Assembly: GCF_001194135.2 (NCBI RefSeq)
Contig: NC_068990.1
Coordinates: 86,013,691 to 86,073,839 of the forward strand
Reading direction: 5' to 3'
DNA from: Octopus bimaculoides
Taxonomy: Eukaryota
Length of the DNA: 60,149 nt
Below are positions 6,322 to 58,349 of this stretch, piece after piece. The position numbers and the translations under genes were made by a program. Below the pieces are notes generated by a model that made no database searches, was not told where the DNA came from, and saw only the letters and a list, made by a program, of their open reading frames with translations. Position 1 is the first letter of the stretch; the number at the start of each line of letters is the position of its first letter.

Positions 6322-6967
6322 CGTCGACCACTAACGTGGACAATTAATGCGCTAGAAATAGATCACATCTTGTGTCTATTAAGACCTAAATTGTTCTCAA
6401 CATGAAATATAGCAGCATACCAAAACATGAGCGGGCAAGATATTTAAAATCACCTAAAAAAGCATTCTTAAACAGGAACCGGTTTCGAATTTAACAAATT
6501 CTTACCATTTGTCTATTCCTCTTCAGCCTGATTTGTAATGTAACCGCAATCATCAGAATCGTATACAGAGTTGCCCACTGCCATGGGTGCGCGTGCATNN
6601 NNNNNNNNNNNNNNNNNNNNNNNNNNNNNNNNNNNNNNNNNNNNNNNNNNNNNNNNNNNNNNNNNNNNNNNNNNNNNNNNNNNNNNNNNNNNNNNNNNNN
6701 NNNNNNNNNNNNNNNNNNNNNNNNNNNNNNNNNNNNNNNNNNNNNNNNNNNNNNNNNNNNNNNNNNNNNNNNNNNNNNNNNNNNNNNNNNNNNNNNNNNN
6801 NNNNNNNNNNNNNNNNNNNNNNNNNNNNNNNNNNNNNNNNNNNNNNNNNNNNNNNNNNNNNNNNNNNNNNNNNNNNNNNNNNNNNNNNNNNNNNNNNNNN
6901 NNNNNNNNNNNNNNNNNNNNNNNNNNNNNNNNNNNNNNNNNNNNNNNNNNNNNNNNNNNNNNNNNNN

Positions 6968-10290: not shown

Positions 10291-10491
10291 TTATTTGGTC
10301 CAAATATTCATCCATGTCACTGTGTGATTGCACACATGAATGGAAGCGTGACGGTGACACCAACTCGGAAAGATGCTGAGACTTACATCAATAATCGGCG
10401 GATCTACGAGACTACCCTCCTACAACATGGTATGTTGGTACAGTTTGGGGATCATCATGCATTCAGATTTTGTGACTCCAGATCTGATGAG
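10291..10491 (+). CDS. AFDN: Afadin exon, FHA domain (LFGPNIHPCHC…FRFCDSRSDE)
   Basis: GTGTAG acceptor, GTAATA donor, 67 codons, strong afadin FHA similarity. Confidence 0.95.
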
Positions 10492-10522
10492 GTAATAATA
10501 TCTACAAATCTTTTCTTTTTAT

Positions 10523-10885
10523 CTCCCTTCTCTCTTTTCCTCCTCTTCCCTTCTCTCTTTTCTTCCTCTTCCCTTCTCTCTTTTCCTCCTCTTCCCTTCT
10601 CTCTTTTCCTCCTCTTCCCTTCTCTCTTTTCCTCCTCTTCCCTTCTCTCTTTTCCTCCTCTTCCCTTCTCTCTTTTCCTCCTCTTCCNNNNNNNNNNNNN
10701 NNNNNNNNNNNNNNNNNNNNNNNNNNNNNNNNNNNNNNNNNNNNNNNNNNNCCTCTTCCCTTCTCTCTTTTCCTCCTCTTCCCTTCTCTCTTTTCCTCCT
10801 CTTCCCTTCTCTCTTTTCCTCCTCTTCCCTTCTCTCTTTTCCTCCTCTTCCCTTCTCTCTTTTCCTCCTCTTCCCTTCTCTCTTT
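10523..10885. repeat. 23-bp pyrimidine minisatellite (CCCTTCTCTCTTTTCCTCCTCTT)n, interrupted by an N-gap
   Basis: Period 23 counted directly. Confidence 0.9.
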
Positions 10886-13767: not shown

Positions 13768-14901
13768 GTAAATTAACTATCATTCATCATATACACTATT
13801 TTATACATGATTTTAATTATGAAAAGAAATTATGTACCAAGATTTAAATTAGTTGCAACTTATGCAAATAAAAATGGTATTTAGACTGATGCAGTTATCT
13901 GTTCTGTACAGGCCTCTTCTTACTATTTTCTCATGAAGTCCTCTTTACAGCATTTCATTTTGTCCNNNNNNNNNNNNNNNNNNNNNNNNNNNNNNNNNNN
14001 NNNNNNNNNNNNNNNCTTTCTGTATGCTCATATCATTGTTGTCATGGATACCAAAAGATAATAGATGACAGAATTAGTTGAGGGCCACACAAAATGCTCT
14101 ACATTGTTTACCCGATGACTCTTTTTGGTTTTCTGTTCAAATTCCATTACAGTTCACCTTCCTTTCAACTTCCTGGAGATTGTATTAAAATTCTTAAGAT
14201 AATTTTTTTTTGTGAGACACTAACATCCTGTCCCAGAGAAGATTCGTCTCTCATCAGTTTAATTACTTCAGTAATTGTGATCCAGTGAATGAGTTTAGAT
14301 TAAGAGATTCTCACATATGATATTTTTTTTCTAACCAATTATAATATTTGTGAGGTTAGCATACTAACTATATTGTCATAATTTCAAATCTTTCTGCTCC
14401 AGTCATTGTGTTGTAATTTATGAGCAGCCAAAATTTTGATCTCTTTAACTGATGAAATAACAGTTTACCATTAAAACGTTAGTAATAGGAAGGGCATCCA
14501 GGTATAAACACAAATTCTCTGTGGAGAAAATCGTCTCACTCATGCAAACATAGGAAAGTGGATGTAAAACTGATGATAGGAAATATAGGAAGGGACATTA
14601 CTTCGTTTATGTCAGTGAGGCACCTAGAGTTATGTACCTTGCTCAGGGGTACAAACATAGTATAAATTACACGAACTTTTTTTCACTTTCGCACGCTGCT
14701 ATCAGTTTATATAAAGTGGTAAGAGGTACGTGTAGTCGAATGATATTTGTATATATTTCATATCACAAATCAAAATAAACCTTGTTGCAATTTAGAATAT
14801 AGAGAGGTGTAACCACCACAAGACCTTTTACCAATTCTATCAATAACAATATTTTAATTCATGACTATTGTCAGTTTGAAACACATTATTATACTTATTA
14901 C

Positions 14902-21640: not shown

Positions 21641-21880
21641 AATGCACTGCTACTGCTGTAGGGGGATCCTGCATTACTACTCTACTAGTTATACCGTACA
21701 CACCACTACTTTTGTCCTAGTTATAATTACACAATATTAATGCCACTACATTACTCATATTCACCATATTTTGATGACCTAACAGCAATTCCATTATAAC
21801 TACTGCAATTCTGTATTTCCAAGGGATAAACTCTGTTCTTGTTGAGATCGTCCAATTCTAACCAAACATTTGCCTTTCAG

Positions 21881-22012
21881 ATTCATCAGAAGGAAGGCGG
21901 ATTTCCAGCACATGTACCACACCCAGATGAATTGCCACCAGAACCTGAAATAATTGAAGTTGTGTTTGAGAAAGTGAAAGGCAGTATAGGACTAAGTATT
22001 GTAGCTGCTAAG
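21881..22012 (+). CDS. AFDN: Afadin exon, PDZ betaA-betaB (…EIIEVVFEKVKGSIGLSIVAAK)
   Basis: TTTCAG acceptor, GTAAAT donor, 44 codons, phase 0/0; GSIGLSIVAAK is the afadin PDZ carboxylate loop. Confidence 0.95.
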
Positions 22013-22534
22013 GTAAATATTCTATTTTACATTTTCCTTCACTGAATTATGACAAATGTTTAGTCTAAGTACTAAGCCCCCCCCATCATCATCTTTTGTG
22101 TCCTTGCTATTAGCCGCCCCCGTTGTCGTCATCTTTGTTTTAAATGTCCATTTGCCGTGCTAGCATATACTGAATGTACCAATCATACAGTATATGTCGC
22201 TTGTCTCATCCTTTTGTTAGCTTTTCTGTGTTGCACAACATCCCGAGATTTTGTCTTGTTTCTCCTCCCCCCACCCCATCCACTGTCTTTCTCTACTAGA
22301 AAAATCCTCCCCTGACAGCATGATACCTTTTCCCTCAGAACCCATTTTCCTTTTCGCTCACATATCCATACCAGATCAGCTCACATCACCCAACAGCTCA
22401 TATTCAGTTACCTTTCCTGTATGTCTCAGCTTTAATATTTAACTAATCTCAACTTTTATGCATTCTACCTTTCATGTAGATTAAATATTGCACATCCAAT
22501 ACATCCTACTTCGTTTGTCCCTAAACTCTATTTT

Positions 22535-22790
22535 TCAGTGGTGTCCTATAAACCATTGAATTATTGGAACACAGTCTTCTCTACTGTTCCATGTTCCTTC
22601 AAATTATTGTGGCACACAATCTTCAATAATGTCTCATAAACCTTTGGATTATTGGGACACAGTCTTCAGCAGTGTCCTATATTCCTTCAAATTATTGTGA
22701 CCCACAGACTTCAGTAGTGTCTCCATATGCCTTCGAGTTACTAGTGCAATAGTCTTCAGCAGTGTTCCATTATCATTCAGATTACTTTTT
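22535..22790. repeat. Degenerate ~42-44 bp tandem repeat, about 6 units
   Basis: Recurrent CAGTCTTCAGCAGTGT…CCTTCAAATTATTG…CAC. Confidence 0.7.
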
Positions 22791-23414
22791 CAGTCAAATG
22801 CAGCAGTTTGCACCTGTAGCTATCTAATTCTCCAATTTTAGATTAATCAACCCAAAACTGAATGAAGAGCTGCAAAATGTAGATAAATGTGACTTGAATT
22901 CTGGTGGAAAGTATTTAACCTTTTCAAGGGTTTCAATGTTTTCATGAACACAGACCCCAAAGTTCTTTGCACATCCATTTAAAAAAAAACACTTAAGCCA
23001 CCATATTTATATACTGTTCCCTTGTTGGGAAATTTGTTTTGATGAATTTATATTGGTCAAAGGGTTAGAGGACATGCATTGATGTATCTTTTTTTTTTTT
23101 TTGCATGTCAGACCAACCCCACCACATATTCACATTCTGTTGATATGTTTCCACATAACACAGTGAATTGGTAGATTCAGTAGTGTTGGACAAAATACCT
23201 TTTGATATTTGTCCTGCTTCTGTACATTCTGTGTTCAAATCCTGCTGAGGTTAACTTTGTTTTTCATACTTTTAGAGATGTTAAAATACAACACCAGTCA
23301 AGTACTGGTGTTGATGCAGCCAACTGTCTCCTTTCCACAAATTCCTGACCTTGTACCTATGTTAGAAGTTATTATATCCATACACAGGAGGACATATGTA
23401 AAATCCTTGTTTAT

Positions 23415-23640
23415 TGATCTAACACTCCATCGTTATCACCATGGTATTAACCTCACTCTCCTTTGTTAAATGCCCTGTTTGTAAATACCCTGCTAACCTA
23501 ACCTTCTGTTGTTAAATACCCCATGTTAACTCGCTGTTATTAACCCAGTTCTTCTTGTTAACCCTAGCCTTGTTAATCACCTCTCTTCACTGTTAACATT
23601 CCCTGCTTTTTGTTAACCTCCCCTGCTTTTTGTTAACCCA
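23415..23640 (+). promoter_or_regulatory. TGTTAAC/YTAAY motif array upstream of microexon 1 (putative splicing element)
   Basis: Exact TGTTAAC at about 23524, 23556, 23591, 23611 and 23631, plus CTAAC/TTAAC/TGTTAAW variants. Confidence 0.5.
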
Positions 23641-23701
23641 CCAGTTTCTCAAACCACCTGAACCCTATCATTATCAACAGCCACGTTTTCTCATTGTGTA
23701 G

Positions 23702-23731
23702 ATTACTATAGTGGACAGCCATGGTCGTACG
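23702..23731 (+). CDS. AFDN: Candidate 30-nt afadin microexon 1 (ITIVDSHGRT), in the PDZ betaB-betaC loop
   Basis: TTTTCTCATTGTGTAG|ATTACTATAGTGGACAGCCATGGTCGTACG|GTAAGT: consensus splice sites, phase 0/0, no stop codon. No transcript evidence available. Confidence 0.65.
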
Positions 23732-24032
23732 GTAAGTAAGCGTGAAATGACCAAGCCATTGGTCTCACACACTGTGTGTCCGATGACTATTTACGACTGT
23801 GTTGTCTCTCTGTCTCTCTCTTTCCCTCCCTCTCTCTCTCTCTCTCTCTCTGCCTGTTCATGTTATGACAAATGTATATTGGTCTTGATTTAATATCACG
23901 GTCACTTCAAGGTCACCTTACCTCAATGCTGGATCACTTATTCACTCATGCATGGTTTCATGTACGTATGTAACACAAATGCATAAACACACATATTCCT
24001 GCACACATGTATATCTGTATGTTATAGAAACT

Positions 24033-24068
<36 letters not shown>

Positions 24069-24519
24069 TTTACACAATTGTATGCACTCATACACATAAC
24101 CTGCACAGAAGACACATGCATATCTACACTCATGCGCACGCACACACACACACATATATATGATGTTGTAATGTTGTTCCAGTAGACTATTTGTTGTAAG
24201 CTTTTGAAAATTTCTGCTTGTTTCACTCACTGACTTTTAGCTTTCTTCAGTTAGTACTGACTGTAGAACTAGTGTAAACTCTACTCTATATACCACTGCC
24301 TATCTTCAGTTTGTATCAAGTATGAAACAAGTGTAATTTATACTCTATATTCTGCTGTCTGCTCCTCTTTTCAGCTGTGTTGCTAAATCAGCTTCATAAA
24401 ACAGCAAAATTTTAAGGGGTACTGTTAGAAAGTAGTCCAAAATGAATGAAAATATTACTTATAGAATTTAATGTAGAATTCTACATTATTTACATTTGGC
24501 GGATATTTGTCCTCATCTT

Positions 24520-24715
24520 GTTTGTTGTTAACCTAACATTTCGGCTGATATACTCTCCAGCCTTCATCAGGTGTCTTGGGGAAATTTTGAACCTGGGTTC
24601 TCATTCCTAAGGTACTTTTTGTTGTTATTATTCAGGTCACTGCCTGGAATCGAACCCAGAATCTTGGGGTTAGTAACCCGCACTCTTAACCACTATGCCA
24701 TATGCCCGTGGGCAA
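24520..24715 (-). mobile_element. tRNA-derived SINE, present only in duplicate copy 1
   Basis: Reverse tRNA-like head (GGAATCGAACCC…TAACCACTATGCCA). Confidence 0.6.
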
Positions 24716-25304
24716 TTATGAAGTCCTTAATACCAGTTCCCATATTCTACTCATATCTGTCTGAGTTATTGTATGATGTAATCAATGCTAACTGATCAAT
24801 ACTTCTGTGAATTTCAATAAAAGTTTGAAGAATTTCATATTACTAAATCTTCTTTATTCATTCATTGTTTCCTTGAGCTGCATTGATGAATTACAGTTCA
24901 GATTTAATTCCACAGTAATTACACTCCCCCGTGATGTATTTTTTCAAGGTTGTGTGTTTATAATACAATATCAACCAAAGTAAGAGATTATGGCATTTAA
25001 TTAGTCTACAAATTTTTACTTGTCAGCTAAAAATGTCATAAAAATTAATGTTGAAATAGAAAACTAAACTGTGTTACCCACAAAATTTCCAAGTTATGCA
25101 AAAAAAAAAAAAAAAAAATCCCCCAGAATAATCCAATGCTTGTAGCCCAATCTGATAACCATAACTCTAGAATTAACGTAAGCTATATACTGCTGTTGTC
25201 TACTCCTGTCTAATAACTAGTTTTGGCACCATTGCTTGGCTATAATTAAAGTATCAGCTCTTTGATTAATGGTTTTGTACACAGCTAATCTAATATAGCC
25301 ATAG

Positions 25305-25352
25305 AAACTCTCTCTTTCTCTATTTCTCTCTTTCTCTCTTTCTCTCTTTCTC

Positions 25353-25393
<41 letters not shown>

Positions 25394-25710
25394 ATTGCTT
25401 TCTCTGTCTCTGTTTATATCTCTCTGTCTGTCTTTCTGTTTATCTCTCTCTATTTATATCTCTGTCTGTCTTTCTGTTTATCTCTCTCTCTCTATTTATA
25501 TCTGTCTGTCTTTCTATTTATTTCTCTCTCTCTCTTTGTGTCTTTCTGTCTATCTCTCTCTGCTTGTCTCTTTCTCACTCTTCCTCTCTCTCTCTTTCTA
25601 TCTATCTCTCTCTCTCTCTCTCTCTTTCTGAATGAGTTTCTTCTTGCCTGCCTCCCTCTGACTTTTCTTCCTTCTGTCCTTATCATTCTCTCCTTACTTT
25701 TCCACTTCCA

Positions 25711-25773
<63 letters not shown>

Positions 25774-25779
25774 TCTTTC

Positions 25780-25859
<80 letters not shown>

Positions 25860-25900
25860 ATCTACCTATTCTCTTACCTCTCTCTCTTACACTCACTCAT
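25305..25900. repeat. (CT)n / (CTTT/CTGT) low-complexity tract
   Basis: Seen directly. Confidence 0.9.
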
Positions 25901-26874
25901 TCCTGAACTCAGAACTCCCTAAGTACTAAGCAGAAAAAGAAAAAAGAAAAAAACACAGACATACAATGGCATGTTCCTTTCAAATTAGTCACCTGTTTCC
26001 TGTAATAGTATACCACACCATTGCACCTATACCCATAGCCATTACTTTGCTACTTCACACTCATTAAATCTCAATCCTTCACTCTTGTTACTCCATTTTC
26101 ACTAACATTTTACTCCTTGATAATAAACAACCACATTCTAGCCACTTCAGTGATTACTATTGTGCTGGTGCTCCAGCCTGGTCAGGAACATCACAGTAGT
26201 CTAAAACGATTAATGAAGGCCTCTAGTACTCCTCTTTTTATAGTTTAGTGATGTTTCGACTTGGTCATCACTAACCTCACCCATAACAGTCGTGGGCTGC
26301 ATGCGACCTGCAGGACTTTCTGGGTGGCCTGCTGAATGAAAAATTTTTTGGTAATGTGGTTTGCTTTATGATAAGCCTTGTCTCCTGTGGCCCACGTAGG
26401 GTGGATTGTTGTTTTTTTTTTTCCCCCTCTAGAGTGTAAGGCTAACAGAGAAAATGATGGATACTTTATTACGACATGATAAAAAAAAAAAGGTTTGCTA
26501 AGTAATAATGATGAATGGAGACAGATCTTCATCATTGGTGAGTCTTCTGTCACTGTTATTACCTAGCACCTTTTTTTTTTTTTTTATCTCTGTTGCAACA
26601 TGGCGTCATCATTGGATGCACTGTTTTATTGCAACCGTTTTACTACGTCTTTCACTGTCTTGTTAGTACCAATTGTAGACTTCACCTTTCATTGTGCTTC
26701 ATTTAAATGAATACCACTAATATATTAAATATCATTTTCTTCCTTCTTCTCTCCAACAAAATAATCTCTACACCAAGTAGAAAAAGAAAATGTTTCGAAA
26801 TTTCTTTGTCAACCTCACAATTCCTCACATACATTCACTTTCATTGTTTTAATTTCACACATAGACATATATTT

Positions 26875-27170
26875 GATGTTAAACCCCTGTTTAATGACTT
26901 ATCAATTTTCCCTGTTTGTTAACCACCACACCATTGTTAAATGTATCCCATTTTCAACGACCACTCTGTTGAATACACCCTGTTAACATCCCTTCTCTAT
27001 TAACCTGTTCCTCCCTCGTTAACCTCCTTTCCATCCTTCGTGTTTAACTATGTCCTGCTAACAACCATTCTTATATCGTTAATGCTAACTTGTTTAACTT
27101 TTCCCCCTGCTCATGTTAACCCAACCCTATAGTTGATGTTCACCTCTGTTAATACCTGCAATTGTTAACC
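26875..27170 (+). promoter_or_regulatory. TGTTAAC/YTAAY motif array upstream of microexon 2 (putative splicing element)
   Basis: Exact TGTTAAC at about 26917, 26981, 27114 and 27163, plus many GTTAAC/GCTAAC/TTTAAC variants. Confidence 0.5.
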
Positions 27171-27232
27171 CTCAGTTTCTAAAACCTTTCAAACCCTGTT
27201 GTTATCAATAGTCACATTTTCTCATTGTGTAG

Positions 27233-27262
27233 ATTACTATAGTGGACAGCCATGGTCGTGCG
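27233..27262 (+). CDS. AFDN: Candidate 30-nt afadin microexon 2 (ITIVDSHGRA)
   Basis: TTTTCTCATTGTGTAG|ATTACTATAGTGGACAGCCATGGTCGTGCG|GTAAGT: 29/30 identical to microexon 1, phase 0/0. Confidence 0.65.
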
Positions 27263-28282
27263 GTAAGTAAGCGTGAAATGACCAAGCCATTGGTCTCACA
27301 CTCTGTGTCTGGTGACTATTTACGACTGTGTTGTCTCTCTCTTTGCCTGTTCATGTTATGACAAACGTATATTGGTCTTGATTTAATGTCATGGTCACTT
27401 CCAGGTCACCTTACCTCAATCTTTGAGGAAATGGTGAATCATTTATTCACTGATGCATGGTTTCATGTATAACACAGGTGCATACACACTGTGTAATTTT
27501 ATGTATTTACACACACACATTAATATGCATGTGTATATATTTGTATATGTATGATGATTGCAAAATGTTCATAAATATATATATATACAAATATTCACAC
27601 ACATTCATATATACACACATGTATGTGCACATATACATGTGCATATATTGTATAAGTAGCATGTTGTTATGATATTGTATCTATTGGTTATTTACTAGTA
27701 AAGTTTCTTGTCTCAATCACGGACTTTGAGTCAATTTTCTTCAATTAGTACTGTTTGTAGAACTAGTTTCTAGAATAGTGTAACTCTACTCTATATACAA
27801 CTGCCTGTCTTCTGTTAGTACCAACTGTAGACGTAGTATAAACTATTCTGTATATGCTACTGCCTGTCTTCAGATATCACCTGTCAGAACTACTGTAAAC
27901 TATATATATATGTATGTAATATTATTGTTCTTTCTTATGTAAAATATAGAACTGCTGAAGAAGTGCTTGGGTTGAACCCAAGACAAAAGATAAGAATTGA
28001 GATATAAACTCAAATTAGGCAATCATACTCATACAATTATAAATTCAACTTAAAATGTGCATACATATATTAATACATATCGACACATGAATATTTTTTT
28101 TAATATTCATAAAATATAAATATATATATATATATACACACATAAAAATGGGTTGTGTTTACATATACTTTTATATATATATATATATTTATATTTTATA
28201 AATATAAAAAAAAAATGTCTATGTATTATATGTATATGCATTTTAAGTCGAATTTATAAATGTATCGTTTTCGTGCGGGTGA

Positions 28283-28470
28283 CACGTAAAAGCACCCACT
28301 ACACTCTCTGAGTGGTTGGCGTTAGGAAGGGCATCCAGCTGTAGAAACTCTGCCAAATTAGATTGGAGCCTGGTGTTGCCATCCGGTTTCACCAGTCCTC
28401 AGTCAAATCGTCCAACCCATGCTAGCATGGAAAGCGGACGTTAAATGATGATGATGATGATGATGATGAT
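28283..28470 (+). mobile_element. SINE-like repeat, family B, present only in duplicate copy 2
   Basis: Near-consensus copy with (GAT)n tail. Confidence 0.75.
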
Positions 28471-28562
28471 TGCCTAATTTGAGTTCATATCTAAATTCTT
28501 ATCTTTTGTCTTACATTCGACCCACGCAGTTCTATATTTTTCGTAAGAAAGAACAATAATGT

Positions 28563-28594
<32 letters not shown>

Positions 28595-30566
28595 TATACA
28601 CTCTGTTGCCTGTTTTCAGTTAGTATCAACCAGAGAACTAGTGTAAATGCTGTTTTAGCTTAGATAACTGTACATGTTTAAAAAGTTTGAAATTGGTTCT
28701 GTCTTCAGTTAAACCAACTAAAGAACTAGTGTAAATGACACTGTTTATGCCACTGCCTGCTCTGATCTAATTACTAGTTTTAAACTCCAATTCTATGCAT
28801 TTGTTTATTGCTGGTCTGTAATCAAGGTATCAGGTCTTCGATAAAGGTTTTACCTGTGACTAATCTAACACGGCTCCATAAACTTGGTCTGTCTGTCTGT
28901 CTCTCTACCTTTGAGTTTCTTTTTTGGCAATCTTGTATTTGCTTGCTTCTTTGATTCACCCCTTCTGCATTTTCCTGTCTTTCTCCTTTCTACTATCTCT
29001 CTTCTGTCTATCTATTCTCTCTCTCTTCTCTTTCATTCACACACCTACTCTATTTTCCTCTCTCTGTCTTTCAGACTCATTCTCTACCTTATAACTCTAA
29101 AGGAATTTATATAGACATTTGATGTCCTGCTCCTTTCAAATTAGTGATTGCTTTATTGTAGCATTGCACCACATTGCACCTATGCATGAGCTGCTACTTT
29201 GCTGCTTCACTTGCAGTAATCGAATCCTCAACCTGAAACAATTTACTGTACTTTCAACTGAAAGATCAGTTCCTCGTAATAAACAATCACATTCTGGCTT
29301 TTTTAGTGGTTACGGTTGTTCGTGATACTCTTGCCTGATCCAGAAAACCTCTATAATCTAAATTGACTAGTGTAAACCTCCAACAGCCAACCCACTGGTA
29401 CACCAGCTTGGTCAAGACCTCCCTTCTAATCTATTAAGTGTTCTGGAAATTAAAGAATCGAAAGACACTAAACCAATACCTTGAAAAGTGACTCAAAACA
29501 AAGAATAGAGCATTTTTTTTTTTAAATATGGGAGACAACTTACTTGAAAGTTTTACTCAAATTGGTTTTCCAAACACTTTTGTTGACTTCAGCCAAACTT
29601 TGAGATCCTCGATTTCCTCTACAGGTTTCTGTCCCTCTATCATACTTTTACGTCTTTCAATACCCCACTCAGTTGAAGGGTCTTACTTTGCAAGTTCTTG
29701 GTGACCCCACTTGTGTCTATAGCAGAATGGATTATTATTATTAAGTGTGCAATATTATGAAATTTTCGCCACGACCATCATCATCATCATCATCATCGTT
29801 TAACGTCCGCTTTCCATGCTAGCATGGGTTCCACCCACAAAATAATAACCTCTTTATGATCTGTCATTAATGGACACCTGATCTGTTGCTGCTGAGCTCC
29901 AGAGCAGTTCTGATGATGTGCACTTAGATCAAAGGCATTGTTGTAGTTATAATAATTATAAACCTCTAAATAAATGCATGACCTGCTAAATATAGCAGCC
30001 AGATCTCCCTTCCTACATACCTCTTAAATTGGGAGAGAGACATTGGCTAATGTAGCTGTCCCATATATATATATATATATATATATATAAACAACTACAT
30101 TAGCTGGTGTATAGTAAAGGAGATCTGGCTGCTATATTTAGCATGCCATGCATCTACTTGGAGGTTGTCTTCTTGACTCAACAAGACCTGTTGTATTTTG
30201 GGTGGCTGAAAATTAAATGTATTTATAATAAATATTTGTATAGTCTTGGTAATTACTGATTAATATTGGCTTTAGAACACATTTTTTTAAAACTCTTGTA
30301 TGTAATTTTAACTTTATCAACAAAGAGACTTTGTTATAGGGTTGCATGCAACGTGAGTCTTTGACTTCTTTCTTACTTTCTCTCTTCCTTTGATTTTTGT
30401 CAACAATGGGAACCATATTGTTCCTTCATTCCTTCCATCTTTTCTCATGTCACCTAAAATAACAAATCAGTTATGTAAGTAAAGTTGGCAACAGATTTTG
30501 TAGCCGTCATTACTGCTGACTATAACTTGCATTTTAATTATCAAAGTTGAAATTTTGTTGCTTTTG

Positions 30567-30599
<33 letters not shown>

Positions 30600-31065
30600 T
30601 GGCTAATTTTCATTTTTCCTTTGTGTGTAGTATTTTATGTGGTCTGTATAAGTTGGTTTTAGAATTGTAAAATACCATTTTCTGTTCTATTGAGGATAAT
30701 CAAGCATAGTCTCAGGTTTCTATTTTATTTTTACCTTCTCCAAACCACTGACCATAAGGGATCATTGTTAAAACGTCTTAAAGAATTTGCTAAAAAAAAA
30801 TAAAACAGGCATTGAATATTTAAGTCAAGGTTTTATTTGGATTGTTTAAAAATACTTGCTAATCACCAAAGCAAACCCTCACTTGCTTCTGGAAGGAAAG
30901 ATGGGCTGTTGTAAAATTGTGCTATCGATCACAAGAGACCATTTAATTTTGCTAATTATCTTCTGGAATGCAAAAGTTTGGTTGAAGATTGAAATCAAAC
31001 TCTGTCCCGGTACACATTTCTTGTTCCTCATCCTGAATATAATTTCTTTCTTCTGCTATTTCCAG

Positions 31066-31131
31066 GGTGATGGCCAGATGTCACGAGGAATCTACATCAA
31101 GTCAGTTGTGCCCGGTGGAGCAGCTGCTTTG
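31066..31131 (+). CDS. AFDN: Afadin exon, PDZ (GDGQMSRGIYIKSVVPGGAAAL)
   Basis: TCCAG acceptor, GTAAGT donor, 22 codons, phase 0/0. Confidence 0.95.
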
Positions 31132-31501: not shown

Positions 31502-31575
31502 GATGGTCGGTTGCAGGCTGGTGACCAGTTACTGGAAGTAGATGGTCGAAGTTTAGTGGGTTTAAGCCAAGAGAA
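31502..31575 (+). CDS. AFDN: Afadin exon, PDZ (DGRLQAGDQLLEVDGRSLVGLSQE)
   Basis: TTTCAG acceptor, GTAAGA donor, phase 0/2; canonical PDZ motif. Confidence 0.97.
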
Positions 31576-31869: not shown

Positions 31870-32104
31870 AAGGTGGCGAGCCGGCAGAAACATTAGCACG
31901 CCGGGCGAAATGCTTAGCGGTATTTCGTCTGCCGCTACGTTCTGAGTTTAAATTTCGCTGAGGTCGACTTTGCCTTTCATCCTTTCAGGGTCGATTAAAT
32001 AAGTACCAGTTACGCACTGGGGTCAATGTAATTATCTTAATCCATTTGTCTGTTCTTGTTTGTCCCCTCTGTGTGTAGCCCCTTGTGGGCAATAAAGAAA
32101 TAAG
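31870..32104 (+). mobile_element. tRNA-derived SINE, family A
   Basis: Near-consensus copy of the 14902 element. Confidence 0.75.
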
Positions 32105-32262: not shown

Positions 32263-32381
32263 AGCTGCTAATTTGATGACAAAAACTGGCCATGTGGTTC
32301 GGTTGAAAGTATCAAAACAAGGAGCAATTTACCATGGTCTAGCAACTCTGCTCAGTCAGCCGTCACCAGTCATCCCAAGAG
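32263..32381 (+). CDS. AFDN: Afadin exon, end of PDZ (AANLMTKTGHVVRLKVSKQGAIYHGLATLLSQPSPVIPR)
   Basis: TTGTAG acceptor, GTGAGG donor, phase 2/1. Confidence 0.97.
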
Positions 32382-34295: not shown

Positions 34296-35631
34296 TCTAG
34301 ATGTAAAAAAAATCAATCCTGTAATTTAACAAACCATTTCACCTACCTTAATGTAGAGAAATTTATGTAAAATTGGGAGGGGGGGGGGNNNNNNNNNNNN
34401 NNNNNNNNNNNNNNAATATTTTTTTTAAAAAACTCACATCATTATGTATCTTGATTTGCTTATGATGCATGTCTGTTGCATAAATGGTTTTGCTTGGTTA
34501 TGACACAAATTTCCTGAGCAAACAGTTTGACTTTTCTTGCCGTTTTTATTTCACTTTGCTGCAATTTATGGAATGTTATTTGAATTTTGTTCTTCTTTAA
34601 TTATTTTTGTTTGTTTTAAATTTTATATTTTGAATCTTTGAAATGGAAAAACAAAAAAAAAAAACAAAAAAAAGAAAGGAAAATGGGGCTTTTTTCCGAC
34701 TTGCATGATAGATCTTGGTCCAATGCTGAGTGCACTCTGCAGGAACTCCAGTGCAGGAAAAATGTCAAAGACCTTGTCCTTGCAGCCGAATGGCGAGGTC
34801 TTTCTGCTTCTACTTCTGCTCCTGTTAATGTTTCATTTGGTGCCAGAAATAACCGCAAAGTTGTTTCGAGTCAAACTAAAATGGGTCTGCACAATATTCC
34901 TAGAAATTCCAACTATATCAGTTCATCTCTGCCAATATTATGGCAACCAGCTCCAAATTTTCGTAAGTCGGTTCAGCACATAGCACAGGCAGCACCATTC
35001 TTTCTCTCTTGTTTAGAATGTAGAGTGGGACAAATCCACCTTGTCTTAGCCTTAATTTGAAGTTCGAGCTCTCCTATGTACTCTCTTATATTATCTGCAT
35101 GATTAAATTGTAGCGTTTTTAATTCCAATTTCCTGATCTTATTTGCTTGATCCTTCCATGTCTTGATCGCATTTGCTTCATCCCTGTTCCTCTTGATCCA
35201 TGTTTTGATCCCCTTTGCTTGATCTCTTTGCATAGTCTTAGCTGCACTGCTAGACACGTCTTAGTAATTTTGTAGCAGTCTTGATTTTTCAGAACCCCCC
35301 AATATCTTGTAAACGGTAAAGACAGTAATATTGATTATAAATTATTAATGTCAACTGACTAATGAAATTACTATCTTGGTTTATTTGGAAAAAGCTATCT
35401 GAAGCTTCCTCATTGATGTCACCATTTACATAGACCTAAATTGGAAGCTACTATCTTCCATCACTACTACTACGATGGCTACAAGATGGTGAGGGGAATC
35501 TGAAGTGGAGAGTAGGAGTGTTGAACTGGTGGTGGGGAATTTGGAAATCACTAGTTTAAGAATGTCATTTTTACAATTATTGGTGACTAAGCAGATACCA
35601 AACTTGGATATTGGGAAAGTTATATATATAT

Positions 35632-39289: not shown

Positions 39290-39650
39290 TGGACTGGCTC
39301 TTGTGTGGGTGGCACATAAAATACACCATTTTGAGCGTGGCCGTTGCCAGTACCGCCTGACTGGCCTTCATGCCGGTGGCACGTAAAAGCACCCACTACA
39401 CTCTCGGAGTGGTTGGCGTTAGGAAGGGCATCCAGCTGTAGAAACTCTGCCAAATCAGATTNNNNNNNNNNCACTACACTCTCGGAGTGGTTGGCGTTAG
39501 GAAGGGCATCCAGCTGTAGAAACTCTGCCAAATCAGATTGGAGCCTGGTGTAGCCATCTGGTTTCACCAGTCCTCAGTCAAATCGTCCAACCCATGCCAG
39601 CATGGAAAGCGGACATTAAATGACGATGATGATGATGATGATGATGATGA
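39290..39650 (+). mobile_element. SINE-like repeat, family B, containing a 10-N gap
   Basis: Family B consensus with (GAT)n tail. Confidence 0.75.
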
Positions 39651-41292: not shown

Positions 41293-41561
41293 GTACATTA
41301 AATTATTATTATTATTATTATTATTAAAGTGGTGAGCTGGCAAAATCATTAGCACACTATGCAAAAATGCTTAGTGGGATTTCATCTGTTTTAACATTCT
41401 GGGNNNNNNNNNNNNNNNNNNNNNNNNNNNNNNNNNNNNNNNNNNNNNNNNNNNNNNNNNNNNNNNNNNNNNAAATCAGTGCCAGTTGAACACTGGGGTT
41501 GATTTAATCAACTTTGCTCTTCCTCTGAAATTTCTGGCCTTGTGCCAAAATTTGAAACCAT

Positions 41562-52340: not shown

Positions 52341-54373
52341 NNNNNNNNNNNNNNNNNNNNNNNNNNNNNNNNNNNNNNNNNNNNNNNNNNNNNNNNNNNN
52401 NNNNNNNNNNNNNNNNNNNNNNNNNNNNNNNNNNNNNNNNNNNNNNNNNNNNNNNNNNNNNNNNNNNNNNNNNNNNNNNNNNNNNNNNNNNNNNNNNNNN
52501 NNNNNNNNNNNNNNNNNNNNNNNNNNNNNNNNNNNNNNNNNNNNNNNNNNNNNNNNNNNNNNNNNNNNNNNNNNNNNNNNNNNNNNNNNNNNNNNNNNNN
52601 NNNNNNNNNNNNNNNNNNNNNNNNNNNNNNNNNNNNNNNNNNNNNNNNNNNNNNNNNNNNNNNNNNNNNNNNNNNNNNNNNNNNNNNNNNNNNNNNNNNN
52701 NNNNNNNNNNNNNNNNNNNNNNNNNNNNNNNNNNNNNNNNNNNNNNNNNNNNNNNNNNNNNNNNNNNNNNNNNNNNNNNNNNNNNNNNNNNNNNNCGTGC
52801 CACCAGCACAAGTGCCAGTAAGGCGACGCTGGTAACGATCACGCTCAAATGGTGCTATTTACGGGCCGCTAGCACGGAAGCCAGACAGCTGCTCTGGCAA
52901 TGAACACGCTCGGACAGTGCCGTTAGTGCTCCACTGGCGCAGGTGCCAGTCATCGAGTATGGTTCAATTACGATTTCACTTGCCCCAACATGTCTTCGCA
53001 AGTAGAGTTTAGTGTCCAATGAAGGAGAGGTTGGCATGAATGCCAGTGGTCGGATGTGGTTCGATTTCGATTTCAGATTTCAAATTTCATGTGTGTCTGT
53101 TTGAGTGGTTACATTCAGTCCTTGCAAGAAAATATTGCTGAGCTACAAAGAGTGATCTTCGTTGACCATTTCCTGTCAACAAATCATGAAACATGTTTTA
53201 GCTTTGAAGTATCAAAGATGTGTGGAATGAAGAGAAAAAAATCTGCTAGCAAGCAAAGCTTAACAGAAAACAGACGAAGAAGCACATCCAGCTTAATAAA
53301 ACATGTCAAAAACATGAATTTTGTTTCCATTGTACGAACCACTGAACTGTGGATCAGAGTATTAAAGTCAAACCTGAAGTCAGCAAAAATAATAGGAATA
53401 TTACTGTAGAGCTTGTTGACAAAACAAACAGATTAGCCATAATAAGATTTGTATTTATAGTTATTGTATTATTTGATGTTGTATCGATGTGACCAGCCAT
53501 GCAATGTTATAATCCCGCAGATTATCTATCTTCAGCACGGAGAAACTTTTAAATGTCGGAATTAATTACTGGGTTTTATTCTTTTATCATTTTACTTGTT
53601 TTAGTTATTGGATGGCTACCAAACTGGGGCACCACCTTGAAGAGTAAAAGCAATCAAAGTGACCCTAGTACTGAGGGGCAGAGGGAGAGAGAGAAAGAGG
53701 TGGGGAGGGAGAGAGAGAGAGAGAGAGACATTAGGGTGCTACACAAAACATATGCGTTATTTAGCTATGGCCCTTTATACTTGGAGTTCAAATACCGCCA
53801 TGAAGTAAGCTTTGCTTTTCATTCTTTTGGGGTAAATAAAATATAAACGTCAGTCATACAGCTGAGTTGATTTAATTTTCTTATAACACAATCTATACAA
53901 CCAGGGCCGGCTCAAGGGACCGGCAACAAGGGACCAGCAGAAGCACTGTCCCAGGTATATGAGTTGTATTCCAATAGGGACCGTACTTCAGTTTCATAGA
54001 ATATTAGTAACTGATCAAGGCTAAAATATTTTCTGGCCTTAATACATATTACTTTCGCCATGTGGTGAGAGGAATTCATTGGGGTTTGGATAATTCACCT
54101 CTGGAAACATCATTTGTTCATCATCCTTAACCAACCTTTATTCAGGGACCTTTTGAACAGGATGGGCTACTCGACCTGAAGAAAATTCTAACTAGACCCC
54201 ATCTGCAAGGTCATGCACTGTTTATCTTAATATGAAATCACTATGTTGCACACACATGATTGTGATACATGTGCCTGGCGTACCCTTATCAGACGGGTAG
54301 TCATGATGGGTATATTGGGCTTCGTATATTTTACCCCAGTGTCACTTTGATGGCATGCACTGCTCTCTCACTC

Positions 54374-54786: not shown

Positions 54787-55421
54787 GTCGAGGTAACAAT
54801 CAAAAGAGGTATCTTCCAGGGTGATTCTTGTTCACCTTTGTTATATTTGCTATAGCTTCGATCCCATTTTCTGTAGTTCTACGCAAAGTCAACGTGCATT
54901 ATGAGATGAGAAAGAATGGACCTCGTCTCAACCATCTTCTTTTCATAGATGATTTAAAACTCTTCAGAAAAACTGAGCCTGGAATGAAGAGGCTGGTTGA
55001 GACTGTGCAAATGTGCAGCAAGGATACAAGGATGGCATTCGGTATCTCAAAGTGTGTGGTGCTCACTTTGAAACGGGGGGAAAGAGCAGATTGTAGGGGC
55101 ATAGAATTGCCAAACGGAGAGCGAATGGAAGACTCGGATGATGATAGATACAAGTACCTTGGGATTCAGGAGTTCGACAATATCTCACCTAGATAATGAA
55201 AGACAAGGTCACTACTGCATATTTGAAGCGCCTCAAACTTCTCTTGAAGTCAAAACTCAACGCAAGGAACCTTATGACTGCTATCAACATATGGACTGCT
55301 GCTGTAATCCGCTACAGTGCATCACATCTCAAATGGACACAAGCGGAGATTAACCAACTCGATCGCACTACCTGAAAGACAATAACAATGCATAGTACCC
55401 TCCGTCTTAAGGCGAACGTAT
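54787..55421 (+). mobile_element. Degraded non-LTR retrotransposon RT fragment, R4/Dong-like
   Basis: Across frameshifts: KRGIFQGDSCSPL…NHLLFIDDLKLF…YKYLGIQE…YLKRLKLLLKSKLNARNLMTAINIW…IRYS…KWT…LDR. Confidence 0.85.
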
Positions 55422-56456
55422 AAGGTAATCACTCGCCATATCGCGGTTCACCTATCGCGTCCTCAGTACATCGCAGATTTTTCTGGTTAATATATGCAAA
55501 TTTATATCGCAGACTCCTCGGTACATCGCGGGTTTCTGCGGCCGATAGGCATTTCTAGTGTAACAATAAATTGTACACATGTCATGCGACATGATAGCTT
55601 TGACTTGCACGGTTGCTCCCACAACCATGTCGCGCACATATGGTTGTGATGCATGTGCCTGGTGTACCCTTATCAGGCAGGTAGTCATGATGGGTACATT
55701 GGGCTACATATATTTGTACCCCAGTGTCACTTTGATGGCATGCTCTGCTCTCTTACTCTATAAAAATCCTTTCTACTATGGGTACAAGGCCTGAAATTTT
55801 GGGGAAAGGAACAAGTTGATTACATCGACCCCAGCATTTCACTGGTACTTCATTTATTGGTCCCGAAAAGATAAAAGGAAAAAATCGACTCCGGTGGCAT
55901 TTGAACTCAGAACGTGAAATCGGACGAAATAGCTATATGTATTTTGCCCGTCGTGCTAACAATTCTGCAATAATAATAATAAGCATAGCAACAACAATAA
56001 AAGAACAATGAAGAAATAATAGATCAGAGGGGATTTATTACTATCATAGTATAATACCAATCTTTTTTTAATATAGGCACAATGCTTGAAAGTTTGGAGG
56101 AGGGGCGAGTTGCTTTTATTGAATACTTGTCTGATACTTATTTTATAGACCCCGAAAGGATGAAAGGCAAAATCGACCTCGACGGGAACTGAACCTAGAA
56201 CGTAAAAGCAGACGGAATACTGCTAATCACTTTGTCCGGCGTGCTGACGATTCTGCCAGCTTGCCAATAATAGAATCTATGTAGGGGTTTAAATGTTCCC
56301 GTTCGTTCGCAATAAATAAATGAATGAATCTCTAAGGGAAGTAACTCGCTGTAAACCACTAGAATTATCTTTCCTTTGTTTTTACTCCCACACTGTCAGT
56401 TTAGTTCCTGCCTAGCGTATGGAACACCAGAGCAAGTGATTGTTTTGGTTTTAACG

Positions 56457-56908
56457 ATGTTTTACTTGTTCTACCTTTCGTTACTGCTGTACACTAGCGT
56501 AATATTTGCACAGGTAGAACAACAACCAACAGCAGATGCAGAGGCAAAAGTAGAAAAAGATCTCACAAAAGAGCCGGGACATCTGAAGAAATTTGGAAGT
56601 GGAAGACCCACCTATCTTATTGATGAAATTGAAGGTTTTCCGGATGCTGAAACATTCTTCTCTAAGTACGTATTTGGCTCACGTCCTCTGAAAATGAAAG
56701 GAGCCGCCCAATTGTTTCCTGCTTATCATTTGTGGACAGATAAATATTTCATGTCTCTGGACATCGACCCAAATTCCACGGTTTTGGTGGAGGAACACAA
56801 AAAAGAGAACCGCACTCTACCGGTGAAATGGATGCATTTTCAGAAGTTTGTACAGATCTATAACGACTCGAATATATATATGGTTCAAGATGTCCCGCCT
56901 TATCTCAA
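56457..56908 (+). CDS. Exon 1 of a signal-peptide JmjC/cupin (Cupin_8-like) 2OG-Fe(II) oxygenase
   Basis: ATG followed by hydrophobic MFYLFYLSLLLYTSVIFA; F..KYV…RPLKMKGAA…AYHLWTDKYF is typical of the N-terminal region of JmjC-only hydroxylases; donor AA|GTAAGT. Confidence 0.85.
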
Positions 56909-57679
56909 GTAAGTGTGAATAACAGATTTCTTTAGCTATTCATTGAATCTTCACACGCAGCACACATGCTTCTGTTTTGTTATTATTTATTGTTGTTGTT
57001 TAGACCCCCGCCTAGACTTGATCAAGGAAGTTCATGTTCAAAAACATTCCAGCTGTAACAATCACGTCTTTATTATGTATCTTCCAGACATAGTATATCT
57101 AAGACTTCATTACACTGTGCTTTGCCATTTTTTGTTAAGACGGTAGATTGTGGTGTAGAGGAGACTTGGCTGCTATTTCTGAAAGCCCAAGCGACTACGT
57201 GGAGATTCTCATTTTTGTTATAAAGTATAAGAAACTAGCAGAGTGGATCAAGCTGTCGATGGTCGAAAGAAATGTCTTCCTCTTTATAGTTTCCCATTCT
57301 ACGTTTCGTATTCCATCAAAGCTTGAAGAAGGTTACCTTTTAACCAAGTTAGGGTTCCCTGCAGATAAGTACCAGTCATTAATTGGTATCAGGTCAATCG
57401 ACTGTACTTCAGCGCGTATCTAATAAACGGGCCGGAGAAAGAAATCAATCTTAATTTACTTCTATTGAATGTAAAGTGCTATTATTCCTTGTGTTTCAGC
57501 GTTAGAATATCAGACAAAAGTGTCTTGTTGTATATCTTTCTGCTCTTCGCCTCCTGAGTTCAAATCGCTCCAAAGCCAACGTTTCCTTTCTTCTCTTCTG
57601 GGTCCATAGAATAACGTAACAGTCAAGTACTGGGGTCGAATTGGCGCAACTCTTTAACTTCCTGATTATTCTGTCAAAT

Positions 57680-58311: not shown

Positions 58312-58349
<38 letters not shown>

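What the first reader, a model, noticed from the sequence alone, without database searches (positions are those of the whole stretch)
23702..27262. Twin 30-nt microexons that would insert 10 or 20 aa into the afadin PDZ domain
Seen: the 9-kb phase-0 intron between …GLSIVAAK and GDGQMSRGIYIK… holds two 30-nt segments (23702-23731, 27233-27262). Both have identical 3' splice sites (TTTTCTCATTGTGTAG), perfect GTAAGT donors and no stop codon. They differ at one base (ACG Thr vs GCG Ala). Established: the betaB-betaC loop influences PDZ ligand specificity, and the afadin PDZ binds nectin-type adhesion molecules. Inference: including none, one or both exons gives up to four in-frame PDZ variants, possibly a tissue- or neuron-regulated switch of junction partners. 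The Thr/Ala difference adds or removes a possible phosphosite. I do not know of this arrangement being described, but could not search.
Basis: partly seen in the sequence, partly recalled or inferred. Interest (0 to 1): 0.9.

Follow-up and report, generated by a model that had tools for sequence, protein, structure and literature searches.

The report
Twin candidate microexons in afadin PDZ
A 9-kb intron inside the PDZ-domain coding part of an afadin gene (probably from a cephalopod) holds two near-identical 30-base segments that look like optional exons and would add 10 or 20 amino acids to a ligand-binding loop, but no RNA or related-species data could be reached to show they are ever spliced in.

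Summary
The window carries an afadin gene. Its PDZ domain is split by a 9,053-nt phase-0 intron after ...GLSIVAAK. That intron holds two 30-nt open segments, 23702-23731 (ITIVDSHGRT) and 27233-27262 (ITIVDSHGRA). Both have the same acceptor and the same GTAAGT donor.

The two segments belong to an old local duplication of about 730 nt. Identity is 79/80 over acceptor, segment and the first 34 intron bases. It is 149/161 over the next 200 nt and only 136/180 in the flanks (core versus flanks p=1.7e-8). All four CpGs kept in both copies lie in the segment or in a predicted hairpin that pairs its 3' half with the downstream intron. The nine other CpG sites survive in one copy only.

This pattern fits constraint on a real cassette exon. 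A short gene-conversion tract would fit it too. The 10 residues fall at the start of the beta2-beta3 loop. A known 5-residue splice insert in PTP-BL PDZ2 lies at the start of the same loop.

No afadin relative examined has residues there. Three unidentified animals share the intron but lack the segment.

I could reach no transcript data and no orthologous cephalopod sequence. Exon status is therefore plausible (about 0.5) but unproven.

The parts
21881..22012 (+). Afadin exon A, the first part of the PDZ domain: IHQKEGGFPAHVPHPDELPPEPEIIEVVFEKVKGSIGLSIVAAK, with donor AAG|GTAAAT
   Evidence: The orthologous exon in a related species (L001) is 91% identical at protein level.
23702..23731 (+). 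Candidate cassette microexon 1 (30 nt, ITIVDSHGRT). Acceptor TTTTCTCATTGTGTAG at 23686-23701, donor GTAAGT at 23732-23737.
27233..27262 (+). Candidate cassette microexon 2 (30 nt, ITIVDSHGRA). Identical acceptor at 27217-27232, donor GTAAGT at 27263-27268.
23630..24361 (+). Duplicated block, copy 1. The high-identity core is 23686-23964. The flanks are diverged and carry (CT)n, (TA)n and (CA)n microsatellites.
27162..27866 (+). Duplicated block, copy 2. The high-identity core is 27217-27469.
23713..23807 (+). Predicted exon-intron hairpin, copy 1. The 3' half of the segment (23713-23729) pairs with intron 23792-23807: 16 bp, 4 of them G-U, with one bulged C. The stem encloses the donor and an inner GACCAA/UUGGUC stem. 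The A/G difference between copies is the first pair of the long stem.
   Evidence: The local 107-nt fold has z = -2.67 (1 of 200 shuffles folds as well). The region was chosen after seeing the fold.
27244..27336 (+). The same predicted hairpin in copy 2. Both stem arms are identical in sequence to copy 1 apart from G27260 (G-U in place of A-U).
   Evidence: z = -1.83 (6 of 200 shuffles fold as well).
23949..23954 (+). TGCATG (Rbfox-type motif), starting 217 nt after the donor of copy 1. It is the only one in 23560-24000.
   Evidence: About 0.06 occurrences are expected by chance in 233 nt (my estimate).
27454..27459 (+). TGCATG in the same aligned position of copy 2, starting 191 nt after its donor
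31066..31131 (+). Afadin exon B: GDGQMSRGIYIKSVVPGGAAAL, with acceptor TTCCAG and donor GTAAGT
31502..31575 (+). Afadin exon C: DGRLQAGDQLLEVDGRSLVGLSQE plus the first two bases of a Lys codon (ends in phase 2)
32263..32381 (+). Afadin exon D, the end of the PDZ domain: (K)AANLMTKTGHVVRLKVSKQGAIYHGLATLLSQPSPVIPR

Best explanation
A lineage-restricted alternative cassette microexon of afadin that has been duplicated in tandem.

Shown:
- Each 30-nt copy has a usable acceptor and a consensus donor, and lies in phase with the flanking PDZ exons.
- Including one copy places ITIVDSHGR(T/A) directly after strand beta2 (...GLSIVAAK), at the start of the beta2-beta3 loop. Including both copies adds 20 residues.

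Inferred:
- The default product is the canonical PDZ with both copies skipped, because every relative examined has the short loop.
- Inclusion is probably partial or tissue-restricted.
- By analogy with PTP-BL PDZ2as, inclusion would weaken or re-tune binding of C-terminal peptide ligands (nectin-type and others) rather than abolish the fold.
- A predicted hairpin pairs the 3' half of the segment with the intron about 60 nt downstream and encloses the donor. It could hold the donor back and so set the inclusion level.
- The two copies carry the same cis signals, and nothing found here would make them mutually exclusive. If used at all, they should respond alike, and double inclusion should occur.
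For: Sequence anatomy.

Rarity: these are the only frame-preserving, open, pyrimidine-preceded AG...GTRAGT candidates in the 9-kb intron. The same filter passes none on the whole minus strand.

Graded conservation between the copies, centred on the segment:
- 79/80 over acceptor, segment and 34 nt of intron.
- 149/161 over the next 200 nt.
- 136/180 in the flanks. Core versus flanks gives Fisher p=1.7e-8.
- The flank divergence (about 24%) is at least as large as the intron divergence from a related species (about 20%). So the duplication is not recent, yet both copies keep intact splice sites and frame.

CpG retention: 4 of 4 sites in the segment or hairpin are kept in both copies, against 0 of 9 elsewhere in the block (p=0.0014, categories chosen post hoc).

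Assembly: no gap (run of N) lies between 14015 and 34389.

Hairpin: z = -2.67 and -1.83.

One TGCATG is conserved downstream of each copy.

Position: the insert is a clean 10-residue gap at the start of the beta2-beta3 loop in alignments to human afadin PDZ. The PDZ Pfam score drops only from 68.5 to 63.1 bits with one insert and 62.1 with two.

Precedent: the PTP-BL PDZ2as 5-residue splice insert at the start of the same loop (PMC4365404, PMC7094393).
Against: - I obtained no transcript evidence of any kind.
- There is no orthologous sequence. The only related-species contigs stop about 290 nt before copy 1.
- Conservation is not significantly higher in the segment than in the adjacent intron (p=0.066). 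It also drops sharply just upstream of the pyrimidine tract, where a branch point should lie (7 mismatches in the 26 nt upstream of the tract).
- There is no consensus branch point between -50 and -15. A conserved AG at -23 would add an in-frame TAG if used.
- The single substitution in the segment is non-synonymous.
- The loop has constant length in 9 afadin relatives and lacks the 10 residues in human afadin and Canoe.
- Three animals with the same intron have no such segment.
- A gene-conversion tract of about 100-280 nt would explain the identity pattern and the CpG pattern without any function.
Confidence: 0.5

Rival explanations
1. A non-functional pseudo-exon inside an intronic segmental duplication. 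An AG...GTAAGT pair in frame arose by chance in one intronic stretch, which was then copied 3.5 kb downstream. The high similarity of the core reflects a later gene-conversion tract, or a younger second copying event, not selection. Neither copy is spliced above noise.
For: - The twins are a single event.
- Identity is high over about 280 nt, mostly intron, and is not significantly higher in the segment itself (p=0.066).
- The boundaries of high identity are abrupt, as conversion tracts are.
- The branch-point region is poor and there is a competing AG at -23.
- The insert is absent from all afadin relatives seen.
- The only change in the segment alters the amino acid.
Against: - Such a candidate is rare by chance: 0 pass on the minus strand of the window, against 2 non-twin passes on the plus strand, one of them a real exon.
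- The peak of identity and all four doubly retained CpGs coincide with the segment, its splice sites and a hairpin that involves them.
- Both copies keep frame, acceptor and donor, although the flanks have diverged by about 24%.
Confidence: 0.38
2. The conserved unit is an intronic RNA structure or regulatory element, not a coding exon. One possibility is a hairpin that binds a factor, another a double-stranded ADAR substrate. Its exon-like look would then be incidental.
For: - A local hairpin is predicted in both copies, with z = -2.67 and -1.83.
- Its stems are identical between the copies, and most differences in that stretch fall in unpaired parts.
- The conserved core extends 233 nt into the intron.
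Against: - No Rfam family matches the core. All hits in the intron are low-complexity miRNA models far below their gathering scores.
- Folds of the whole core are not better than shuffles (z = +0.39 and -1.10).
- The region for the local fold was chosen after seeing the fold.
- With only two sequences there is no covariation to test.
- This reading does not explain the in-frame, stop-free, 3n length or the consensus donor.
Confidence: 0.08
3. Assembly artefact: two haplotypes, or a collapsed repeat, laid side by side in a draft assembly, so that only one copy exists in the genome.
For: The window is from a draft assembly with seven runs of N.
Against: - No run of N lies between 14015 and 34389.
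- The copies differ by 5% in the core and about 24% in the flanks, with several indels. The sequence further out on either side is unrelated. That is far beyond allelic difference.
Confidence: 0.03

Closest known systems
PTP-BL / PTP-BAS (PTPN13) PDZ2 splice isoform PDZ2as / PDZ2b (PDB 1q7x)
   Same: An alternatively spliced short insert at the start of the beta2-beta3 loop of a PDZ domain. It leaves stability nearly unchanged and lowers or abrogates binding of C-terminal peptides (PMC4365404, PMC7094393). 1q7x is itself among the matches to the PDZ studied here.
   Different: - The insert is 5 residues (VLFDK), not 10 or 20, in a different protein, in vertebrates, from a single segment rather than a duplicated one.
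- Splicing and the binding effect are shown for PTP-BL. For the afadin segments neither is shown.
- I did not check the residue-level register of the two insertion points.
Tandemly duplicated exons used in a mutually exclusive way
   Same: Two adjacent, homologous segments of equal length and phase, produced by tandem duplication within one intron.
   Different: - Nothing here would enforce exclusivity. The length is 3n, the copies are 3.5 kb apart, both have identical GT-AG sites, and no docking/selector pairing exceeds shuffles.
- Neither copy is an obligatory part of the protein, because relatives lack the segment altogether.
Neural microexons that depend on SRRM4 / the eMIC domain
   Same: A very short, frame-preserving segment with a strong donor, lying in a protein-interaction domain of a junction or synapse scaffold gene, with conserved flanking intron.
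   Different: - No UGC motif lies near either acceptor. The nearest TGC is at -76 to -78.
- 30 nt is above the 3-27 nt definition (from memory).
- Neural use is untested.
Exon-intron hairpin editing sites such as the GluA2 R/G site
   Same: A predicted stem between the end of the segment and the nearby downstream intron encloses the donor. The only A/G difference between the copies lies in that stem, 3 nt before the donor. A-to-I editing of it would turn Thr into Ala, which is what copy 2 encodes.
   Different: This is a structure prediction only, with no RNA data. The stem is 16 bp with four G-U pairs. The resemblance is recalled from memory and is a lead, not a test.

Membership tests
Alternative cassette exon / microexon | AG acceptor with a pyrimidine tract, and a GT donor, in the sense orientation inside an intron | tested here: met
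   TTTTCTCATTGTGTAG | 30 nt | GTAAGT in both copies. The branch-point context is weak.
Alternative cassette exon / microexon | Frame-preserving and free of stops in the phase set by the flanking exons | tested here: met
   Phase-0 intron, 30 nt, ITIVDSHGRT and ITIVDSHGRA
Alternative cassette exon / microexon | Present in spliced transcripts (junction reads or cDNA) | not testable with these tools
   The protein collections returned no transcript-derived afadin of this lineage. No paper in the library mentions one.
Alternative cassette exon / microexon | Exon and splice sites conserved in related species beyond the neutral level | tested here: inconclusive
   - The related-species contigs L001-L003 end about 290 nt before copy 1.
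- Pattern scans of metagenome and GTDB contigs found nothing.
- The within-genome comparison of the two copies does show a conservation peak on the segment.
Alternative cassette exon / microexon | Length within the microexon range | tested here: inconclusive
   30 nt is inside the 30-nt and 51-nt definitions and outside the 3-27-nt definition. The definitions are recalled from memory.
Mutually exclusive tandem exons | A mechanism that prevents joint inclusion: a frame shift, a short intervening intron, incompatible splice sites, or competing RNA pairing | tested here: not met
   The length is 3n, 3,501 nt lie between the copies, and the GT-AG sites are identical. Complementarity to the rest of the intron does not exceed shuffles (a crude test).
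Mutually exclusive tandem exons | One of the alternatives is always present in the protein | tested here: not met
   Human afadin, Canoe and 9 other relatives have no residues at this position.
PDZ beta2-beta3-loop splice insert (PTP-BL PDZ2as type) | The insert lies at the start of the beta2-beta3 loop of a PDZ domain | tested here: met
   The insert forms a clean 10-residue gap immediately after ...GLSIVAAK in alignments to the afadin PDZ structures 7qcr, 1t2m and 1xz9. The Pfam PDZ match is retained.
PDZ beta2-beta3-loop splice insert (PTP-BL PDZ2as type) | The insert changes peptide-ligand binding | not testable with these tools
   The single-sequence AlphaFold model was unusable (pLDDT 38.7).
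SRRM4/eMIC-type neural microexon | UGC motif close upstream of the acceptor | tested here: not met
   The nearest TGC is at -78 in copy 1 and -76 in copy 2.
Rbfox-enhanced exon | (U)GCAUG within a few hundred nt downstream of the exon | tested here: met
   One TGCATG at 23949 and one at 27454, aligned between the copies. A single site is weak evidence.
Recursive splice site / RS-exon | A 5' splice site is regenerated at the acceptor (AG|GTRAGT) | tested here: not met
   The segment starts ATTACT.
ADAR exon-intron hairpin substrate | A stable duplex between the exon and a nearby intronic complementary sequence | tested here: inconclusive
   A 16-bp stem is predicted in both copies, with z = -2.67 and -1.83. 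The region was chosen post hoc.
ADAR exon-intron hairpin substrate | A-to-G differences between cDNA and genomic DNA | not testable with these tools
   No RNA data are available.

The most novel reading that the evidence does not exclude
Both copies are real and used in combination, giving 0, 10 or 20 extra residues that end in Thr or Ala. This would grade the ligand binding of the afadin PDZ domain in a cephalopod. The donor-enclosing exon-intron hairpin would set the inclusion level and also serve as an ADAR substrate. A-to-I editing of A23729 would then recode Thr to Ala, the state that copy 2 carries hard-wired in the genome.
Probability: 0.1. Interest if true: 0.6.

Novelty: new member of a known kind. 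Interest (0 to 1): 0.35.

Why it matters
Afadin links nectin-type adhesion molecules and other receptors to actin through its single PDZ domain. The review PMC7094393 calls splice variation inside a PDZ domain "considerably less reported". If these segments are spliced, a cephalopod would have evolved its own way of tuning that binding site, in two steps of 10 residues. That would give a natural test of how the length of the beta2-beta3 loop controls PDZ binding.

It would also be a clean example of a young, duplicated microexon. The within-genome conservation gradient found here could then be reused as a transcript-free signal of exon function. If the segments are not spliced, the site is an ordinary intronic duplication with a chance pseudo-exon.

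Tried and rejected
Searches that led nowhere:
- Protein search with exon A + insert + exon B. It returned only one related-species genomic ORF (P0001) and two ORFs from more distant animals. It returned no transcript-derived afadin.
- Contigs carrying P0001. They are about 80% identical to window 21641-23381 and end about 290 nt before copy 1.
- Protein search with the ORF that reads through copy 1, and with a six-frame concatenate of 23440-23990. Neither found anything. All three searches of this kind are now used.
- Exhaustive representative search with the same ORF. The one hit is a spurious repetitive protein.
- Exact look-ups of three window ORFs to find the source genome or its reads. 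None is on record.
- A degenerate 38-nt pattern for the segment with its splice sites, scanned in metagenome contigs and in GTDB genomes. No match.

A search that gave context only:
- The search for related loci in metagenome contigs returned afadin PDZ loci of unidentified animals. L009, L010 and L011 have the same AAK|G intron (1000, 416 and 513 nt) but no homologous segment. L004-L008 have no intron there.

Ideas tested and rejected:
- Docking/selector RNA pairing for mutual exclusivity: no better than shuffles.
- Rfam scan of the whole intron: only low-complexity miRNA-model hits, far below gathering scores.
- Transposable-element origin: no other copy of the core in the window apart from its (CT)n tract. 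A 60-kb window cannot settle this.
- Recursive splice site: rejected, the segment starts ATTACT.
- Haplotype or assembly artefact: rejected on divergence and the absence of gaps.

Structure:
- The single-sequence AlphaFold2 model was unusable (pLDDT 38.7).

Literature:
- No paper combines afadin/AFDN/MLLT4 with microexon and PDZ.
- A 2026 preprint that covers Octopus bimaculoides microexons does not mention afadin, and none of its supplements is held.
Full report
**1. The observation**

- Exon A is 21881-22012. It encodes ...EVVFEKVKGSIGLSIVAAK and ends AAG|GTAAAT.
- Exon B is 31066-31131. It follows TTCCAG, encodes GDGQMSRGIYIKSVVPGGAAAL and ends before GTAAGT.
- The intron between them is 22013-31065, which is 9,053 nt in phase 0.
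- Inside it, 23702-23731 reads ATTACTATAGTGGACAGCCATGGTCGTACG (ITIVDSHGRT).
- 27233-27262 is the same except for G at 27260 (GCG Ala instead of ACG Thr).
- Each segment is preceded by TTTTCTCATTGTGTAG and followed by GTAAGT.
- A 36-nt pattern with up to three mismatches finds only these two places in the window, and none in 100 shuffles.

**2. The gene**

- The spliced PDZ sequence comes from exons A and B plus exon C (31502-31575) and exon D (32263-32381).
- It matches Pfam PDZ at 68.5 bits.
- Its best solved relatives are human afadin PDZ (7qcr, E 4.7e-30; also 1t2m, 1xz9, 3axa) and Drosophila Canoe (7mfw).
- An FHA-domain exon lies upstream at about 10291-10500, in the order expected for afadin.
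- The organism is not identified. I suspect an octopod from the repeat content, but that is memory, not a test.

**3. Where the insert would fall**

- In the alignments to afadin PDZ structures, the ten residues are a clean gap directly after ...GLSIVAAK and before G(A/D)GQ. That is the start of the beta2-beta3 loop.
- With one insert the Pfam score is 63.1 bits, and with two it is 62.1.
- Nine other afadin PDZ sequences from unidentified animals have a loop of constant length with nothing at this position. Human afadin and Canoe also lack the ten residues.

**4. The twins are one duplication**

- The similar block runs 23630-24361 versus 27162-27866.
- Identity is uneven along it:

| Stretch | Content | Identity |
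|---|---|---|
| 23686-23765 | pyrimidine tract, segment, first 34 intron bases | 79/80 |
| 23766-23964 | downstream intron, with three indels including a (CT)n tract | 149/161 |
| 23634-23685 and 24234-24361 | flanks | 136/180 |

- Between the core and the 3' flank lies a microsatellite stretch that aligns poorly.
- Core versus flanks gives Fisher p=1.7e-8. The innermost tier versus the next gives p=0.066.
- The flank divergence is about 24%. That is at least as large as the roughly 20% intron divergence between this genome and the related species represented by Logan contigs L001-L003. So the duplication is not recent.
- No run of N lies between 14015 and 34389. The sequence outside the block is unrelated. 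A haplotype or assembly artefact is therefore unlikely.

**5. A CpG signal**

- Thirteen aligned columns in the block hold a CpG in at least one copy.
- Only four hold it in both. Two are in the segment (23726, 23730), one is at intron position +10 (23741), and one is at 23794.
- All four lie in the segment or in the hairpin described in section 6. The other nine survive in one copy only (4/4 versus 0/9, p=0.0014).
- I chose the categories after seeing the data. A short conversion tract would give the same picture.

**6. A predicted hairpin**

- In both copies the 3' half of the segment (GGACAGC-C-AUGGUCGUA, 23713-23729) pairs with UACGACUGUGUUGUCU in the intron (23792-23807).
- The stem has 16 pairs, four of them G-U, and one bulged C. 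It encloses the donor and an inner perfect GACCAA/UUGGUC stem.
- The local 107-nt fold has z = -2.67 (1 of 200 shuffles folds as well). In copy 2 the value is -1.83 (6 of 200).
- The folds of the whole core are not better than shuffles (z = +0.39 and -1.10).
- The only difference inside the segment, A23729 versus G27260, is the first pair of the long stem (A-U versus G-U), three bases before the donor.
- This could be a donor-masking structure. It could also be an ADAR substrate in which editing of copy 1 (Thr to Ala) would reproduce what copy 2 encodes. Both ideas are untested leads.

**7. Splice-signal context**

- The donor is consensus.
- The acceptor is weaker. The only YTNAY motifs shared by both copies are TTAAC at -69/-68 and CTCAT at -12, which is too close to the AG.
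- AG dinucleotides at -59 and -23 are conserved in both copies. Use of the one at -23 would add 21 nt with an in-frame TAG.
- No TGC lies within 75 nt of either acceptor. The motif typical of SRRM4/eMIC-dependent microexons is therefore absent.
- One TGCATG lies at the same aligned position, starting 217 nt after the donor of copy 1 and 191 nt after that of copy 2. About 0.06 are expected by chance, so this is weak evidence.

**8. Chance**

- Of 15 AG...GTRAGT combinations of 9-75 nt in the intron, only the twins are 3n, open in phase 0 and preceded by at least 70% pyrimidines.
- The same filter passes four sites on the whole + strand: the twins, real exon B, and 58835-58870 in a neighbouring gene. 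It passes none on the - strand.
- The filter was tuned to the candidate, so it overstates the case. Even so, a chance pseudo-exon of this quality in this intron is unlikely rather than expected.

**9. Other animals**

- Metagenome contigs gave ten afadin PDZ loci of unidentified animals.
- L009, L010 and L011 have an intron at exactly the same AAK|G phase-0 site, of 1000, 416 and 513 nt. L004-L008 have none.
- None has an ITIVDSHGR-like segment. No convincing alternative microexon is visible in those introns.
- The intron position is therefore shared beyond this lineage, while the segment is not.

**10. What could not be done**

- I could reach no RNA evidence and no orthologous cephalopod sequence across the segment.
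- The three protein searches, the exhaustive search, the exact look-ups and two pattern scans all failed to reach it.
- The structural model without an alignment was unusable.
- The paper library holds nothing on an afadin PDZ microexon.

**11. Interpretation**

- The best reading is a lineage-restricted cassette microexon that was duplicated in tandem. I put it at about 0.5.
- Skipping would be the default. Inclusion would lengthen the beta2-beta3 loop by 10 or 20 residues.
- The documented precedent is PTP-BL PDZ2as. There a 5-residue splice insert at the start of the same loop leaves stability unchanged but cuts the peptide association rate about ten-fold and abrogates APC and RIL binding (PMC4365404).
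- The review PMC7094393 notes that splicing inside PDZ domains is rarely reported. It also notes that extended beta2-beta3 loops can add contacts to upstream ligand residues or mediate dimerisation.
- So attenuation or re-tuning of binding is a better-founded prediction than a simple partner switch.
- I found nothing that would make the copies mutually exclusive. If they are used, double inclusion should be seen.
- The main rival, at about 0.38, is a chance pseudo-exon in a duplicated stretch of intron that is kept alike by gene conversion.
- Two minor rivals are an intronic RNA element that is not an exon (about 0.08) and an assembly artefact (about 0.03).

**12. Novelty and score**

- If real, this is a new member of known kinds: an alternative microexon in an interaction domain, a tandem exon duplication, and a PDZ loop splice insert.
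- It would be new for afadin, as far as the searched library shows.
- It would interest people who work on PDZ domains and on cephalopod transcriptome diversity. It would not overturn anything, and at present it is unproven. Interest 0.35.

Noticed in passing
L004 (1750-1926) versus L011 (4701-4781 and 5292-5360) and L012 (433-501): Unidentified animals in metagenome contigs have very similar afadin PDZ exons (KVHGSMGLSIVAAK / GEGQEKRGIYIKSVVPGG). They differ in whether the AAK|G intron is present: it is absent in L004 and present in L011 and L012. This points to intron gain or loss, or to a processed copy, among fairly close relatives.
   Followed up: partly
window 28414-28468 and 29776-29830: Two 55-nt arms are 98% complementary (AACCCATGCTAGCATGGAAAGCGGACGTTAAATGATGATG...) and lie 1.3 kb apart in the same intron. 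They look like two oppositely oriented copies of a short interspersed repeat ending in an (ATG)n tract. Such a pair could form a long double-stranded RNA in the pre-mRNA.
   Followed up: no
window 31918-31995, 53553-53843, 58108-58266, 58278-58520: A repeat recurs in several places. In translation it reads ...AEV(D/N)F(A/T)FHPFGVDK.... It is presumably an abundant interspersed element of this genome.
   Followed up: no
window 25286-25900: A long, degenerate CT-rich microsatellite or minisatellite of about 600 nt, with periods of 8-14 nt, sits between the two copies. The shorter (CT)n tract inside copy 1 (23805-23850) is largely absent from copy 2.
   Followed up: no
window 24234-24361, 27728-27866, 28603-28647, 28717-28758: A unit of about 59-70 nt (CTTCAGTTAGTACTGACTGTAGAACTAGTGTAAAC...ACTGCCT) occurs twice downstream of each microexon copy and twice more further on. 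It is a local repeat family of unknown nature.
   Followed up: no
window 54825-55193: An open stretch shows a weak match to reverse transcriptase (Pfam RVT_1, 24.6 bits, below the cut-off). It contains an FIDD motif. It is probably a decayed retroelement fragment downstream of afadin.
   Followed up: partly
window 56355-56909 and 58835-58870: A second gene lies downstream of afadin on the + strand. One exon-like ORF has a faint Cupin_8 match (17.3 bits, below the cut-off). A 36-nt AG...GTAAGT segment (CPELFEEGFATT) passes the same exon filter as the twins.
   Followed up: partly
window 6599-6967, 10688-10751, 13966-14015, 34389-34414, 39462-39471, 41404-41472, 52341-52795: Seven runs of N mark this as a draft assembly. 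None lies in the intron under study.
   Followed up: yes
L001 1154-1291 versus window 21875-22012: Logan contigs from runs SRR11869384, SRR11869390 and SRR11869391 carry the orthologous exon A of a related species. It is 91% identical at protein level, with about 80% identity in the flanking intron. I could not establish what organism those runs come from.
   Followed up: partly
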